This document shows positions 7,743-31,444 of a stretch of 64,000 nt of DNA, piece by piece (the first letter of the stretch is position 1; the number at the start of each line of letters is the position of its first letter). The DNA is taken from positions 226,275 through 290,274 of the IMG/VR virus record IMGVR_UViG_3300032287_004484, one strand, 5' to 3'. Under the pieces are notes generated by a model that saw only the letters and a list, made by a program, of their open reading frames with translations, was not told the origin of the DNA and made no database searches. The translations under genes and the position numbers were made by a program.

Positions 7743-7824
7743 GGATCTATGGTGAAATTGGTAGACACAAGAGACTTAAAATCTCTCGCATAAAAGCGTG
7801 CAAGTTCGATTCTTGCTAGATCCA
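7743..7824 (+). tRNA. tRNA-Leu(TAA), CCA not encoded
   Basis: Acceptor GGATCTA/TAGATCC, D-loop TGGTAGAC, anticodon arm AGAGA-CT TAA AA-TCTCT, long variable arm, T-loop GTTCGAT. Confidence 0.95.
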
Positions 7825-8816: not shown

Positions 8817-8890
8817 TGGCAAGTAGCTCAGTAGGTAGTAGCAAAGCACTGTTAATGCTTGGGTCGTAGGTTCGAATCCTACCTTGCCAG
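8817..8890 (+). tRNA. tRNA-Asn(GTT), CCA not encoded
   Basis: Acceptor TGGCAAG/CTTGCCA, anticodon arm AAGCA-CT GTT AA-TGCTT, T-arm GTAGG-TTCGAAT-CCTAC. Confidence 0.95.
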
Positions 8891-23158: not shown

Positions 23159-23494
23159 TTAAATTAGATATTCCTCTAATTTAAGAGTTGTAAAAAGATC
23201 CTCTAAACTTTGACTAAAAATTTGATTAGGATGAAGTCCTAATATATAATTTAATTGTTGAGGTGTCAAAACAAATACTTCATCCTCAGGATAACTAACT
23301 AAATACTCTTCATATAATTCATCGTTTAAAATAAAATCAACATAGTTATCACCTATTAAATCATTTTTTTTATCAAACTCATTAACGATTGATGGATCAT
23401 ATATTTTTTTATTTTCTAAATCAAATAAAACGCATTCAATTATTTGATGATTAATTTGATGGCAATTAAGATAAATATAATAACTGTTTTTCAT
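23159..23494 (-). CDS. small tagged accessory protein (LEEYLI)
   Basis: Tag present although followed by a promoter rather than a coupled gene. Confidence 0.7.
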   Translation of the reverse strand: MKNSYYIYLNCHQINHQIIECVLFDLENKKIYDPSIVNEFDKKNDLIGDNYVDFILNDELYEEYLVSYPEDEVFVLTPQQLNYILGLHPNQIFSQSLEDLFTTLKLEEYLI

Positions 23495-23883
23495 ATCACT
23501 AGCTCATATAATTTATTTTCAATAAAATATTCATTAATATATTCTGATTTCATAGATTTTGGTCTATTCCTTTTTAAGTTAAAAAAAGTTTTTAAATTTA
23601 AAGGATACATTTTTTTTATATTAACATCATATATATGATCATATTTAACATCCTTTAAAAGTAATCTTTCTAAATTAAAAGTTTTTTTGATATCATAACG
23701 TTTATCAAAATAACGAAATTCCATTAAAACGTTATCTTTAACGTCCACATAATGATATTCAGAAAAATAAGATATAAAATAATAATTATTAAAATTAATT
23801 AAATCTAATTTATATCCATATAAATTACCATTATTAACGTAATTATCATCAATAATATGAACGTAATATCCTTCAAATTTCAA
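23491..23883 (-). CDS. small tagged accessory protein (LYELVI), paralog of 25314..25658
   Basis: LDLINFNNYYFI vs LCLIDFNNYYVI. Confidence 0.7.
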   Translation of the reverse strand: MKFEGYYVHIIDDNYVNNGNLYGYKLDLINFNNYYFISYFSEYHYVDVKDNVLMEFRYFDKRYDIKKTFNLERLLLKDVKYDHIYDVNIKKMYPLNLKTFFNLKRNRPKSMKSEYINEYFIENKLYELVI

Positions 23884-24200
23884 AGTAAATGTTCACTCAA
23901 ATTATTTTCTAATAAGATGTTACGATATTGATTAATAGATTCTTCTAACTGAAATACTTTAGACGATAGAGCGTCATTTTCTTCTTGTAAGGTATCAATT
24001 TCAACTCTGTACTCTGAATTTGCACCTAGAGAGTCTGATATATCATCTTCTAATCTTGAACACTCATTTATTTTTTCTACGTAATCATAAAAAACATTCT
24101 CAATTTTGTCTAGTAGAGTTCCTCCTCTAGAAACATTAAATTCATCTTTATATTTATATAATAAAGATTCTATATCATTATAAAATTTTTCATAATCCAT
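23880..24200 (-). CDS. coiled-coil tagged protein (LSEHLL) directly downstream of the pistol ribozyme
   Basis: True start MDYEK at 24200, with GGAG 8 nt upstream. Confidence 0.75.
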   Translation of the reverse strand: MDYEKFYNDIESLLYKYKDEFNVSRGGTLLDKIENVFYDYVEKINECSRLEDDISDSLGANSEYRVEIDTLQEENDALSSKVFQLEESINQYRNILLENNLSEHLL

Positions 24201-24208
24201 ATTATGAT

Positions 24209-24282
24209 CTCCACCGCACAAACCATTTTAAAGAGTGTGCACGCTCTGGCTTAAGGAACTATTTAAAGTCGCCAGGACGACT
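24209..24282 (-). ncRNA. pistol self-cleaving ribozyme
   Basis: Minus strand AGTCG-TCCTGG-CGACT-TTAAATAG-TTCC-TTAAG-CCAGA-GCG-TGCAC-loop-GTGCG-G^T-GGAG: P1, pseudoknot, conserved UUAAAUAG, UUAAG and GCG, P3, P2 and GU cleavage site all fit the pistol consensus. Confidence 0.88.
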
Positions 24283-24317
24283 GCTAGGAAAAATTAAGGG
24301 ATATTGGTAATTCTTTT

Positions 24318-24626
24318 TTAAATATATGCCTCTAATAATCCTAATCTAAATATAAAATCTTTTACATCTATATTTTGAATTTCATAGTTAGTCATTTTTA
24401 ATATTTTTTTAAAGATATCATTATCAATAAAATATTTATAATAATTTTCTTTATTAAAAGATTTTATTATTTCTTGATTTTTAGATTTACTTACTTCTTG
24501 TCCTAACATATAAAAAGTCATTGTAAAAAAATTATTATCACTATGATAGTTATTACCTTTATTATCATATAATAATAACCCTTTTATAGAATCTCCTTCT
24601 AATCTTATATATAAAATATTATCCAT
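24318..24626 (-). CDS. small tagged accessory protein (LLEAYI)
   Basis: Behind promoter motif 24656-24672. Confidence 0.7.
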   Translation of the reverse strand: MDNILYIRLEGDSIKGLLLYDNKGNNYHSDNNFFTMTFYMLGQEVSKSKNQEIIKSFNKENYYKYFIDNDIFKKILKMTNYEIQNIDVKDFIFRLGLLEAYI

Positions 24627-24757
24627 TTGTAACTATTATATAATTATTTTAGATAAGTGTTTAAACCTAAAATTCTGTATAGGATATTCTTTTGGGTTTA
24701 GTCACTATTAAATTTTTAGTTTATTATTTAACTAGATAAATAAAAAGAGGCAAAATT

Positions 24758-25312
24758 ATGAAATTATAAATTAAAGAAATTTATACCTTCAATGGAAAAG
24801 AGTATGATTCTCTTGAACAATTAAAAGAAGCTAAAATCAAATATAATCAACAATTATTAGAGGAGTCACCTCAGAAAAAAAGTAATTTTTCTCTTATTCC
24901 AGTTTACGATGTTGATATTTCTAATTTAATTTTTCATCACGAAATTTATGATGAGGCTACTTTATTAGATTTAGTTGAAATGCGTCAAAAATTATCCAAC
25001 GAACAGTATCGTTATGTGCTACCTACTTATTCTGAAATAAAAAAATTACAAACTTTAAAACTTATTCCTGAATGGTTGCCTTTAAAAGAATTTTGGACTT
25101 CTACTAGATTTTTATATAACACTTATATTTCTTACGATAATGAAAGAAAAGTTTTTAATGATATTTATCCACAATATAAAAGAATGGCATTTCTTCTTAA
25201 AAAAGAAAATAAACAAGAATCTTGGTTTAGAGATCCTCCAATTCCAAATTCAATCGACGAAATGATTTATCTTGATGAGAAACAAAAAGGTAAAATTATT
25301 TATTCCTATTAA
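24758..25312 (+). pseudogene. Lcl/DUF1566-like protein with an in-frame TAA at codon 4
   Basis: GAGG SD and ATG 24758 are in frame with track ORF 24980..25312; single TAA at 24767-24769; YVLPTYSEI and EFWTST motifs. Confidence 0.55.
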
Positions 25313-30113: not shown

Positions 30114-30434
30114 ATGAAAGCAAAGAAAGGTTTAGTTCTATCAAAAGAAGATGAAGATATTCTTTTTAATCCTAATATTGTTAGTATTGGTTTATCAATC
30201 AAATATGTAAATGATGTTTCTAAAGTAAGAAATTTAAAGTTTGAAAAAATTTTAGAACAGTATTGTGAAGAATATGAATCTTTATGGGGAATAGATGAAA
30301 GTGAGATTTCTTTTTACATAAGAAAAATATTAAAAGGACCTTGGCCAAAAATGGAAAAATATTTGTCAGATCCTTTTTTACAGAAATATAAAATCTTCTT
30401 AGAAGAAAATAATTTTCAAGAACACTTGATTTAA
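30114..30434 (+). CDS. degenerate solenoid-family tagged protein (FQEHLI)
   Basis: FYIRKILKGPWPKME; convergent with the RNA ligase. Confidence 0.65.
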   Translation: MKAKKGLVLSKEDEDILFNPNIVSIGLSIKYVNDVSKVRNLKFEKILEQYCEEYESLWGIDESEISFYIRKILKGPWPKMEKYLSDPFLQKYKIFLEENNFQEHLI

Positions 30435-31444
30435 TCTTCTTTTAAAAGAAATTTATTACTGATTGCTTTAAATGATGTTCGATTAAGAATTTTAGTTCTT
30501 AAAACAATCCCTTCTCTTTCTGTATCTTTATGTAATAAAGATTTACCTTCTGCATAAGTCAATAATTCTTTCATGTTAAAAGGTAATTTAAAATCTTCAT
30601 CAATCATTGGAACTGTCTCTAATCCTAGATTTTTAATGATCGTTTTAAAATCATTAAAGTTATAATATTTCATAGTGAATATATCGAAAACATTAAAGAA
30701 TTTAATTTGATGTCCAGATATTTTATACTTATTACCTTGAATACCTTCACCAATTAATTCACCTTGTAAAGCAATATTATCTATTGATTTACTTTTTAAA
30801 ATATTTTCAATATTTAATTTTCTAACAGTAGACCAAAAAGTATTTTTATCGTCTTCTAGTAAATCTAAATTCCTAGAACAAACTCCAAAGACACCGTCTT
30901 TTAAATAAATAGTTATCGAACTACCATCACATTTTTCTGTGACATAGTATTGATCATCAACTAATTTATTATAATCTAAATTTTGGATTCTTTCTTCATC
31001 AGTTTTTGGAATTTCAGATGGGAAATTTCCTCTTGCAACTCCACTTAATTGTGCTGGAATAGGAGGTTCGTATTTTTGAATTCCTAACTCTTCTGTTAAA
31101 TCTTCACTTACATAAAAGTTTCTTTCTTTTAATAAAGAAGAATCAATTAAAGTTTTTATTGGAACTATTAATCCTTGACTTATAGTTCCTCTTAACTTAA
31201 CTGTCTTTAGACGAAAGCCTTCTTGATCACCCATTTTTTTATAAGAACTTTTTCTTAAAAATTCAAACACTGGATGAATTGGTAAAAAAGAATCAATCTC
31301 AAAATAAACACACATTTGTCTAACTTCAAAATCACCTTTTTTAACAACACAGTTCCATCCGTCTACTACAGCAACCTCAATAAGATCAGCCCCTTCTATA
31401 GGAACTAATTCTTGAACATATCTAATAGTGGCTAATTTTCTCAT
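30431..31444 (-). CDS. RNA ligase, DRB0094/Rnl2-like family with N-terminal OB-like domain
   Basis: MRKLATI...IEGADLIE; TEKCDGSS (motif I), LQGELIG, EREGIV, FKAIS. Confidence 0.92.
   Translation of the reverse strand: MRKLATIRYVQELVPIEGADLIEVAVVDGWNCVVKKGDFEVRQMCVYFEIDSFLPIHPVFEFLRKSSYKKMGDQEGFRLKTVKLRGTISQGLIVPIKTLIDSSLLKERNFYVSEDLTEELGIQKYEPPIPAQLSGVARGNFPSEIPKTDEERIQNLDYNKLVDDQYYVTEKCDGSSITIYLKDGVFGVCSRNLDLLEDDKNTFWSTVRKLNIENILKSKSIDNIALQGELIGEGIQGNKYKISGHQIKFFNVFDIFTMKYYNFNDFKTIIKNLGLETVPMIDEDFKLPFNMKELLTYAEGKSLLHKDTEREGIVLRTKILNRTSFKAISNKFLLKED

What the first reader, a model, noticed from the sequence alone, without database searches (positions are those of the whole stretch)
24198..24282. 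Pistol ribozyme whose P2 stem hides the Shine-Dalgarno of the next gene
Seen (minus strand, a GC-rich island): P1 AGTCG/CGACT with loop TCCTGG; TTAAATAG; P2 5' strand TTCC; TTAAG; pseudoknot partner CCAGA; GCG; P3 TGCAC/GTGCG; G^T; P2 3' strand GGAG; then ATCATAAT-ATG (24200). Known: this matches the env25 pistol layout (CGUGG UUAGGG CCACG UUAAAUAG UUGC UUAAG CCCUAA GCG UUGAU..AUCAG GU GCAA), which cleaves at G^U to give 2',3'-cyclic phosphate and 5'-OH. The pseudoknot here is one pair shorter. Predicted cut between 24214 and 24213. Inference: cleavage releases an mRNA starting UGGAGAUCAUAAUAUG with a freed SD and an RNase-resistant 5'-OH end, i.e. ribozyme-gated translation of 23880..24200 and its coupled downstream genes.
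Basis: partly seen in the sequence, partly recalled or inferred. Interest (0 to 1): 0.92.

Follow-up and report, generated by a model that had tools for sequence, protein, structure and literature searches.

The report
Pistol ribozyme heading a phage operon
A real, evolutionarily conserved pistol self-cleaving ribozyme sits just upstream of a small-gene operon in an uncultivated 290 kb phage. Its last four bases (GGAG) are very probably also the next gene's ribosome-binding site, but this overlap is a local peculiarity and "ribozyme-gated translation" is not shown.

Summary
The predicted cut lies between G24214 and U24213. The P2 3' strand GGAG (24212-24209) lies 8 nt before the only ATG of gene B (24200).

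The same ribozyme lineage heads B-like genes in four related phage lineages. Its core is 38-41/41 identical where gene B DNA is only 60-64% identical, so it is under selection. What lies upstream varies: gene A, an unrelated gene, or only a promoter with two tandem ribozymes.

The best reading is a constitutive processing element, a natural counterpart of the synthetic insulator RiboJ. It would set a fixed 5'-OH end 13 nt before the B start codon.

The SD/P2 overlap is not a family trait. Among 57 unique pistols this window has the shortest gap to a start codon. Relatives have GGAA, and two lineages carry a separate SD further downstream.

"Gating" has no known input, P2 is a weak mask, and a 5'-OH end is not generally RNase-resistant. 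I file it as a new member of a known family, of moderate interest.

The parts
24635..24663 (-). Promoter-like element TAAACA-17 nt-TATAAT, the presumed start of the transcription unit
   Evidence: Consensus scan. The motif AATTTTAGGTNTAAACA-N17-TATANAAT is shared with L152 and L160. Function is inferred, not shown.
24318..24626 (-). Gene A (102 aa, hypothetical). It has no SD and may be leaderless. It is a swappable cassette between the promoter and the ribozyme.
   Evidence: ORF. No family match. It is replaced by an unrelated 97-aa gene in L150/L152 and is absent in L160.
24283..24289 (-). Conserved 5' flank UCCUAGC (UCCYAGY in all copies of this lineage), function unknown
   Evidence: Alignments A5 and A6. 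The homology breakpoint with L150/L152 is at 24289. The motif is found only next to these ribozymes.
24209..24282 (-). Pistol self-cleaving ribozyme, full length
   Evidence: Rfam RF02679 at 47.7 bits, gathering score 34.5, model positions 1-68. It is 74/74 identical in L151 although gene B there is 81% identical in DNA.
24267..24282 (-). P1 hairpin AGUCG/CGACU with loop UCCUGG (24277-24272), which is the 5' strand of the pseudoknot
   Evidence: P1 and pseudoknot covariation in 54 pistols: 96.4% of cells paired, 0 of 500 shuffles as good.
24255..24258 (-). P2 5' strand UUCC
   Evidence: Invariant in all related copies.
24242..24254 (-). Catalytic junction UUAAG-CCAGA-GCG. It holds purine-32 (24251), G33 (24250), the pseudoknot 3' strand (24249-24245), and the equivalents of env25 G40 (24244), C41 (24243) and G42 (24242).
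   Evidence: Invariant or nearly invariant columns of alignment A4. Residue roles come from PMC6154101. Relatives differ only by A or G at position 32, a change that keeps activity in env25 (PMC6154101).
24215..24241 (-). P3 hairpin
   Evidence: The outer five pairs are conserved. The distal part differs in each lineage but keeps its own pairing, and 3 pairs changed on both sides.
24213..24214 (-). G|U junction. The predicted scissile bond is between G24214 and U24213.
   Evidence: Position in the Rfam alignment. The cleavage site of the family is taken from PMC4604425 and PMC6154101. Cleavage was not tested here.
24209..24212 (-). P2 3' strand GGAG, which is also the probable Shine-Dalgarno sequence of gene B
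   Evidence: It lies 8 nt before the ATG, like the SDs of other genes in the window. It is GGAA in L154, L158, L160, L161 and L162; both forms pair with UUCC.
23880..24200 (-). Gene B (106 aa, coiled-coil-like, hypothetical). It has a single ATG.
   Evidence: Homologues found. The family alignment fixes the N-terminus.
23491..23883 (-). Gene C (130 aa). Its TTG start overlaps the TGA stop of gene B.
   Evidence: Homologues follow B in L154, L158 and L160.
23159..23494 (-). Gene D (111 aa). Its ATG overlaps the stop of gene C.

Best explanation
This is a functional pistol self-cleaving ribozyme that belongs to the 5' end of a conserved operon of small genes (B-C-D...) in a group of uncultivated, AT-rich jumbo phages. 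As soon as the P2 3' strand has been transcribed, the RNA folds and cuts itself between G24214 and U24213. The cut detaches whatever lies upstream: gene A here, another gene or only a leader in relatives. The upstream piece ends in a 2',3'-cyclic phosphate. The operon mRNA is left with a fixed 5'-OH end, U-GGAG-N8-AUG. The four-pair P2 then falls apart. In this lineage its 3' strand, GGAG, serves as the Shine-Dalgarno sequence of gene B. The element therefore works like a constitutive processing site or insulator, a natural counterpart of the synthetic RiboJ, and not like a regulated gate.

Shown here: family membership, conservation, genomic architecture and SD geometry. Inferred: actual cleavage, the transcript structure, use of GGAG as the SD, and the consequences for expression.
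For: **It is a pistol.**
- Rfam hit well above threshold.
- All conserved core residues are present.

**It is under selection.**
- It is 74/74 identical in L151, where gene B DNA is 81% identical. That gives P of about 8e-6 for no change, using a divergence I derived from the BLAST identity outside the ribozyme.
- The first 41 nt are 38-41/41 identical in L154, L158, L160, L161 and L162, where gene B DNA is 60-64% identical.
- Substitutions fall at tolerated positions (purine-32, P3 interior). The P3 interior is rebuilt with compensatory pairs.
- The shortened pseudoknot recurs, with covariation, in unrelated pistols.

**It belongs to the B operon, not to the upstream gene.**
- The ribozyme precedes B-like genes in four lineages.
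- The upstream content is gene A (window, L151), an unrelated gene (L150, L152), other genes (L154, L158), or a terminator plus promoter with two tandem copies and no cistron (L160).

**The SD reading is plausible.**
- GGAG lies 8 nt from the only ATG of B.
- Other genes in the window use GGAG-type SDs at 5-10 nt.

**The position fits the family.**
- About half of 57 pistols lie 8-56 nt upstream of an ORF on the same strand.
- Published work suggests ribozymes process polycistronic RNAs (PMC6765202). Pistols cleave at about 10 per min (PMC4604425).
Against: - No cleavage assay or transcript data exist for this RNA.
- The promoter call is a consensus match in AT-rich DNA, where such matches are no more frequent than chance.
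- The pseudoknot has a bulge, and its effect on the cleavage rate is unknown.
- In L160 the same 8-nt geometry has GGAA, a poor SD. The short distance, not an SD function, may be what is conserved.
- Some genes of this phage have no SD at all.
- Nested folding predicts the SD region to be mostly paired both before and after cleavage.
- The conserved 5' flank UCCYAGY is not explained by this model.
Confidence: 0.62

Rival explanations
1. One reading: ribozyme-gated translation. The SD is locked in P2 until self-cleavage, so cleavage is the obligatory and possibly tunable switch that turns on B-C-D. The 5'-OH end then stabilises the message.
For: - GGAG is both the P2 3' strand and the only SD candidate.
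- Synthetic switches of exactly this design work in bacteria (reviewed in PMC8495972, PMC10353319).
- The conserved 5' flank could in principle compete with the pseudoknot or with P2 and so tune cleavage.
Against: - No ligand or sensor domain is present.
- Pistol cleavage is fast (PMC4604425), so the masked state lasts only seconds.
- P2 is weaker than SD:anti-SD pairing.
- Three of the four lineages have GGAA, and two carry a separate SD outside the ribozyme. None of 56 other pistols shows the overlap.
- A 5'-OH end is a substrate of RNase J1 (PMC3997798).
Confidence: 0.2
2. Cleavage lowers expression. The 5'-OH end, only one nucleotide from the SD, gives a 5'-3' exonuclease (RNase J type) direct access. 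The operon is then expressed less than gene A, or only while ribosomes protect the 5' end.
For: - The glmS precedent, and trimming by RNase J1 up to the initiating ribosome (PMC3997798).
- Strong AAGGAG-type SD use and 23% G+C, which I read as hinting at a Firmicutes-like host (an inference, not a test).
Against: - The host is unknown.
- In L160 there is no upstream gene to be favoured, and the ribozyme is duplicated. That is an odd way to reduce expression of a promoter's only operon.
Confidence: 0.1
3. The element matters mainly at the DNA level, as a conserved junction where gene cassettes are exchanged by recombination. RNA cleavage would be secondary or lost.
For: - The homology breakpoints lie exactly at the ribozyme's 5' flank (24289) and at the -10 element (24634).
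- There is a tandem duplication in L160.
- Arrays of near-identical ribozymes lie between small genes in other phages.
Against: - The pattern of conservation is that of an RNA structure. The catalytic core is invariant, there are compensatory changes in P3, and the U-A to U.G change keeps P2 paired.
- A recombination site would not need these features.
Confidence: 0.05
4. A chance match or a decayed, inactive ribozyme.
For: The score (47.7 bits) is at the low end of the pistols sampled (39.7-70.2 bits). The pseudoknot is one base short.
Against: - E = 1.3e-5 for the whole window.
- Strong purifying selection across four lineages.
- The short pseudoknot is a recurrent, covarying natural variant.
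Confidence: 0.03

Closest known systems
Pistol ribozyme family (Rfam RF02679; env25, Lysinibacillus sphaericus and Alistipes putredinis representatives)
   Same: - P1, P2, P3 and a pseudoknot between the P1 loop and the P2-P3 junction.
- The AAA linker, purine-32, G33, and the equivalents of G40, C41 and G42.
- A two-base G|U junction.
- Phage context and an intergenic position on the coding strand.
   Different: - The pseudoknot 3' strand is one base shorter, giving five pairs and a bulged C.
- A lineage-specific conserved 5' flank, UCCYAGY.
- The P2 3' strand coincides with the SD of the next gene.
- A stable association with one operon across related jumbo phages.
RiboJ and related synthetic ribozyme insulators (PMC6206723)
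   Same: A self-cleaving ribozyme placed between variable upstream sequence and the ribosome-binding site. The downstream mRNA then always starts at the same 5'-OH end, whatever lies upstream.
   Different: - RiboJ is engineered from a satellite-RNA hammerhead and carries an extra hairpin to expose the RBS.
- Here the element is natural, belongs to the pistol class, and the RBS lies inside the ribozyme's closing helix.
- Function here is inferred only.
Synthetic hammerhead, twister and pistol switches that mask the SD in a ribozyme stem (reviewed in PMC8495972, PMC10353319)
   Same: The SD is base-paired within a ribozyme helix and is released by cleavage.
   Different: The synthetic devices carry an aptamer that controls cleavage and use longer masking helices. 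Here there is no sensor and the mask is only four pairs.
glmS ribozyme in 5' UTRs of Gram-positive bacteria (PMC6765202, PMC3997798)
   Same: A self-cleaving ribozyme in a 5' leader whose 5'-OH product decides the fate of the downstream mRNA.
   Different: glmS needs the cofactor GlcN6P and cleavage leads to decay by RNase J1. Here there is no cofactor site and the outcome is unknown.

Membership tests
Pistol ribozyme (RF02679) | Covariance-model score above the curated gathering threshold over the full model | tested here: met
   47.7 bits against 34.5, model positions 1-68, E = 1.3e-5. Relatives score 45.5-50.8 bits.
Pistol ribozyme (RF02679) | [quoted passage not shown] | tested here: met
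   - P1 is AGUCG/CGACU.
- Loop UCCUGG can pair with CCAGA as five pairs with one bulged C, one base fewer than canonical.
- The same short form occurs in L141, L149, L138 (with a compensatory change) and L136/L140.
- Covariation of P1 and the pseudoknot in 54 pistols: 96.4% of cells paired, 0 of 500 shuffles as good.
Pistol ribozyme (RF02679) | About ten highly conserved nucleotides (AAA linker, purine-32, G33, G40, C41, G42) | tested here: met
   All are present: A at 24264-24262, A at 24251, G at 24250, GCG at 24244-24242. These are the invariant or nearly invariant columns of A4. Residue roles come from PMC6154101 and PMC4604425.
Pistol ribozyme (RF02679) | Two-nucleotide junction (usually GU) between the 3' strands of P3 and P2, which holds the scissile bond | tested here: met
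   G24214 and U24213, exactly two nucleotides, aligned to the model's junction. It is invariant in the related copies.
Pistol ribozyme (RF02679) | P2 and P3 helices supported by covariation | tested here: met
   - P3: the distal part differs in each lineage but keeps its pairing, and 3 pairs changed on both sides.
- P2: UUCC pairs with GGAG or GGAA, a one-sided change from U.G to U-A. This is weak evidence for P2 alone.
Pistol ribozyme (RF02679) | Mg-dependent self-cleavage giving a 2',3'-cyclic phosphate and a 5'-OH end | not testable with these tools
   Needs in vitro transcription and end mapping.
Ribozyme-gated or SD-masking translational switch (a functional class, known only from synthetic devices) | SD sequestered in a ribozyme helix | tested here: met
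   GGAG at 24212-24209 is the P2 3' strand and lies 8 nt from the ATG.
Ribozyme-gated or SD-masking translational switch (a functional class, known only from synthetic devices) | A regulatory input, or a mask strong and long-lived enough to control initiation | tested here: not met
   - No extra domain is present.
- P2 duplex is -2.5 kcal/mol against -5.2 to -6.4 for the anti-SD pairing.
- No predicted gain in SD accessibility after cleavage.
- The family cleaves at about 10 per min (PMC4604425).
Ribozyme-gated or SD-masking translational switch (a functional class, known only from synthetic devices) | Conservation of the SD/helix overlap among relatives | tested here: inconclusive
   - It is conserved in the four near-identical contigs.
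- L160 has the same 8-nt spacing but GGAA.
- L154/L161 and L158/L162 have separate SDs 28 and 21 nt downstream.
- None of 56 other pistols shows the overlap.

The most novel reading that the evidence does not exclude
Because the SD is the last strand needed to close the ribozyme, 30S binding and catalytic folding exclude each other. Self-cleavage would then be an obligatory activation step for the B operon, or the reverse: ribosome availability would decide whether the transcript is cut. The conserved 5' flank UCCYAGY could act as a decoy for the pseudoknot or for P2 and so set the cleavage rate. This would be the first natural ribozyme-based translational switch of the kind that synthetic biologists have built, and it would give a biological role to the pistol class.
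Probability: 0.15. Interest if true: 0.7.

Novelty: new member of a known kind. Interest (0 to 1): 0.38.

Why it matters
The biological role of pistol ribozymes is still unknown, as it is for most bacterial and phage self-cleaving ribozymes (PMC6765202). This locus gives a concrete, testable case:

- one ribozyme lineage tied to the 5' end of one conserved operon;
- interchangeable upstream content;
- a tandem copy in a plain 5' leader in one relative;
- in this window, a ribosome-binding site built into the closing helix.

If cleavage is confirmed, the locus would show that phages use pistols to give mRNAs a defined 5'-OH end independent of context, the principle behind engineered ribozyme insulators. 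If the SD overlap also affects initiation, it would be a natural precedent for SD-masking ribozyme switches. Otherwise it is one more phage pistol, with a shortened pseudoknot.

Tried and rejected
1. **MFE folding of the region.** The program cannot model the pseudoknot and pairs the P1 loop with the pseudoknot strand instead. z = 0, so it is uninformative about the fold.

2. **My own covariance model from a MAFFT alignment.** Abandoned because P3 was misaligned. I used the Rfam model on the fetched loci instead.

3. **My regex and energy parsers for P2/P3.** They were error-prone and were replaced by the Rfam coordinates.

4. **L134 as a second SD-in-P2 case (GUGG-AG-AUG).** Rejected: no substantial ORF follows.

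5. **Stop-codon recoding.** The 128-aa homologue P0003 seemed to read TGA as Trp. The DNA has TGA, so the protein is a table-4 gene call. ORF coverage of the window does not improve with TGA or TAG read as sense, and TGA ends 31 of 99 long ORFs.

6. **Function of genes A-D.** No Pfam or PHROG match. The protein atlas gives only viral hypothetical clusters.

7. **Host assignment.**
   - No near DNA match among isolated phages.
   - Protein matches are distant and taxonomically scattered.
   - Both genome-contig scans found no real pistol of this type.

8. **Other ribozymes in the window.** None, even at E <= 1.

9. **Pairing partner of the conserved 5' flank.** Several 3-4 bp options exist and none is resolvable, because the flank hardly varies.

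10. **Literature.** Full-text searches found only synthetic SD-masking ribozymes and no natural pistol example. The discovery paper (PMC4509812) is not held.

Full report
**1. The observation**

| Element | Sequence | Window coordinates |
|---|---|---|
| P1 5' strand | AGUCG | 24282-24278 |
| P1 loop (pseudoknot 5' strand) | UCCUGG | 24277-24272 |
| P1 3' strand | CGACU | 24271-24267 |
| Linker | UUAAAUAG | 24266-24259 |
| P2 5' strand | UUCC | 24258-24255 |
| Junction | UUAAG | 24254-24250 |
| Pseudoknot 3' strand | CCAGA | 24249-24245 |
| Core | GCG | 24244-24242 |
| P3 hairpin | | 24241-24215 |
| Cleavage dinucleotide | G\|U | 24214\|24213 |
| P2 3' strand | GGAG | 24212-24209 |
| Spacer | AUCAUAAU | 24208-24201 |
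| Start codon | ATG | 24200-24198 |

- A scan of the whole window against all 4227 Rfam families gives one ribozyme hit. It is Pistol (RF02679) at 24282..24209, full model, 47.7 bits against a gathering score of 34.5, E = 1.3e-5.
- A permissive scan finds no other ribozyme.
- The element is 47% G+C in a window of about 23% G+C.

**2. The shortened pseudoknot**

The model alignment shows a one-base gap in the pseudoknot 3' strand (GCC-AGAGCG). The loop UCCUGG can still form five pairs with CCAGA if one C bulges out.

- Among about 45 real pistols from IMG/VR this was the only copy with the short strand.
- A targeted metagenome scan found it in independent pistols:
  - L141 and L149 have the same loop and partner but different P1, P2 and P3.
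  - L138 has UCCCGG with CCGGA, a compensatory change.
  - A human-gut family (L136, L140 and others) has UCUGGG with CCAGA.
- All pass the Rfam threshold.
- In 54 pistols collected here, P1 and the pseudoknot are paired in 96.4% of cells. None of 500 shuffles was as good, and slid controls gave 28-44%.

The short pseudoknot is a natural subclass, not a sign of decay.

**3. Where the window comes from**

- The window is part of IMGVR_UViG_3300032287_004484, a 290,274 bp viral contig.
- It encodes a UvsX/RecA-like recombinase, a helicase, an RNA ligase, an AAA ATPase and two tRNAs.
- It has no near relative among isolated phages. The host is unknown.
- Many genes carry AAGGAG-type Shine-Dalgarno (SD) sequences 6-9 nt before the ATG, so the host's ribosomes use SD pairing.
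- There is no evidence for stop-codon recoding.

**4. The local gene map (minus strand)**

1. A promoter-like TAAACA-17-TATAAT at 24663-24635.
2. Gene A (24626..24318, 102 aa, no SD, possibly leaderless).
3. A 35-nt spacer that ends in a conserved flank UCCUAGC (24289-24283).
4. The ribozyme.
5. An 8-nt spacer.
6. Gene B (24200..23880, 106 aa), whose only Met codon is the start.
7. Gene C (23883..23491), overlapping B by TTGA.
8. Gene D (23494..23159), overlapping C by ATGA.

None of the encoded proteins matches a Pfam or PHROG family. There is no terminator between A and B.

**5. Relatives**

Sequence and profile searches with gene B and the contigs that encode the hits give four lineages in which the same ribozyme precedes a B-like gene.

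| Lineage | P2 3' strand | Gap to ATG | Separate SD |
|---|---|---|---|
| window, L150, L151, L152 | GGAG | 8 nt | none |
| L160 (two identical tandem copies; values are for the second) | GGAA | 8 nt | none |
| L154, L161 | GGAA | 28 nt | AAGG |
| L158, L159, L162 | GGAA | 21 nt | GAGGGTG or AAGGGTG |

All copies share P1 AGUCG, loop UCCUGG, pseudoknot strand CCAGA and P2 5' strand UUCC.

Evidence that the RNA is under selection:
- In L151 the ribozyme is 74/74 identical although gene B DNA is 81% identical. That gives P of about 8e-6 for no change, using a divergence I derived from the BLAST identity outside the ribozyme.
- In the distant lineages the first 41 nt are 38-41/41 identical, while gene B DNA is 60-64% identical.
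- Differences fall at purine-32 (A or G), at linker position 22 and inside P3. A32G keeps activity in env25 (PMC6154101).
- The distal part of P3 is different in each lineage but pairs with itself each time.

This is the signature of a functional structured RNA.

**6. What lies upstream varies**

- L150 and L152 carry an unrelated 97-aa gene in place of gene A. The homology breakpoints are at window 24289, the start of the flank, and at 24634, the -10 element.
- In L160 a terminator and the homologous promoter-like element are followed directly by the two ribozymes, with no cistron in between.
- In L154 and L158 other genes precede the ribozyme.
- Downstream, homologues of B and C follow in all lineages.

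The ribozyme therefore belongs to the 5' end of the B operon and not to any upstream gene.

**7. The SD/P2 overlap in context**

I used Rfam coordinates for 57 unique pistols and measured the distance from the ribozyme's 3' end to the next ORF start on the same strand.

- The window has the shortest distance, 8 nt. The next shortest are 16-19 nt.
- About half of the pistols lie within 56 nt of a start, usually with a separate SD downstream of the ribozyme.
- SD-like P2 3' tetramers occur in 4 of 57 pistols (GGAG here, AGGA twice, AAGG once). Only here does a start codon follow at SD spacing.

The overlap is therefore not a property of the family. Within the lineage, GGAA is the commoner state (three of four lineages). 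GGAG occurs where the ATG is 8 nt away and no other SD exists. The A-to-G change keeps P2 paired (U-A becomes U.G) while improving SD pairing. This is suggestive of selection for SD function, but it rests on a single event.

**8. Mechanism**

*Most likely (confidence 0.62).* The ribozyme cleaves constitutively during transcription. This sets a constant 5'-OH end, U-GGAG-N8-AUG, for the operon mRNA whatever lies upstream. GGAG serves as the SD once the four-pair P2 has dissociated. This matches the published suggestion that bacterial and phage ribozymes process polycistronic RNAs (PMC6765202). It is also the principle of the engineered insulator RiboJ (PMC6206723).

- No sensor or regulatory input is visible.
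- Pistols cleave at about 10 per min (PMC4604425).
- P2 is worth about -2.5 kcal/mol as a duplex, against -5.2 to -6.4 for SD:anti-SD pairing.
- Nested folding predicts no gain in SD accessibility after cleavage.

*Against "RNase-resistant 5'-OH".* In RNase J organisms the 5'-OH glmS product is degraded by RNase J1 (PMC3997798). The effect of the 5'-OH end therefore depends on an unknown host.

**9. Unexplained**

All copies of this lineage carry UCCYAGY immediately 5' of P1, mostly within CUUGCCUCCCAGC. In L158 and L162 it lies 6 nt further away.
- The motif is absent from the other pistol loci and from the rest of the window.
- It could pair with the P1 loop as a decoy of the pseudoknot strand, with U|GG across the cleavage site, or with GGA of P2.
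- It varies too little to test any of these.

**10. Verdict**

This is a genuine, selected pistol ribozyme and a new member of a known family, from a short-pseudoknot subclass. Its genomic logic is interesting and testable: it is tied to one operon and it behaves like an insulator. The SD embedded in P2 is real as sequence but idiosyncratic. Ribozyme-gated translation and RNase resistance remain speculation. Interest is moderate.

Noticed in passing
window 24758..25312 (+), stop at 24767-24769: A plus-strand gene with a good SD and ATG has TAA as its fourth codon. The frame then stays open into the 110-aa ORF at 24980..25312. The 99%-identical relative L152 has GAA at that codon. Intact 183-184 aa homologues in L154 and L160 align from window 24755 onward. 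This is a nonsense mutation or a sequencing error in this contig.
   Followed up: yes
window 24283-24289 (-); L150, L152, L154, L158, L160, L161, L162: A conserved GC-rich flank UCCYAGY (mostly CUUGCCUCCCAGC) lies directly 5' of P1 in every copy of this ribozyme lineage. It is absent from other pistols. Its function is unknown. It may be a decoy for the pseudoknot or for P2.
   Followed up: partly
window 24290-24633 (-) versus L152 268-652 and L160 2780-2816: Gene A is an exchangeable cassette. Relatives carry an unrelated 97-aa gene, or no gene at all, between the same promoter-like element and the same ribozyme. The homology breakpoints lie at the -10 element and at the ribozyme flank.
   Followed up: yes
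window 24626-24663 (-): Gene A has no SD, and its ATG lies 8 nt after a -10-like TATAAT. It may be translated from a leaderless mRNA. The element AATTTTAGGTNTAAACA-N17-TATANAAT is shared with L152 and L160.
   Followed up: partly
L160 2817-2891 and 2918-2992: Two identical pistols in tandem, 26 nt apart, lie in a 5' leader just after a terminator and a promoter-like site. The second ends 8 nt before the B-like start codon.
   Followed up: yes
L103, L125, L024, L109 (IMG/VR contigs): Ribozyme arrays between small genes: seven pistols in L103, two pistols plus seven type II hammerheads in L125, and three pistols each in L024 and L109.
   Followed up: no
window 30431..31444 (-): An RNA ligase gene (PF09414 plus the PHA02142 OB domain) lies 6 kb from the ribozyme. 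Its best match is 48% identical, in a 735 kb uncultured phage. Any link to ribozyme products is not evident.
   Followed up: partly
L151 gene 320-706 (protein P0003): The database protein of 128 aa reads TGA as Trp, which is a table-4 gene call. The DNA has a TGA stop exactly as in the window. L151 also lacks about 300 nt of gene C.
   Followed up: yes
window 7743-7824 and 8817-8890 (+): Two phage tRNA genes: Leu (anticodon TAA) and Asn (anticodon GTT).
   Followed up: no
about 40 IMG/VR loci, for example L001, L003, L009: A highly repeated element, AAATAGTAGTTACGCCCATGAGCG followed by a terminator-like hairpin, matched my first pistol pattern. It has no P1 or pseudoknot and is not a pistol.
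   Followed up: no
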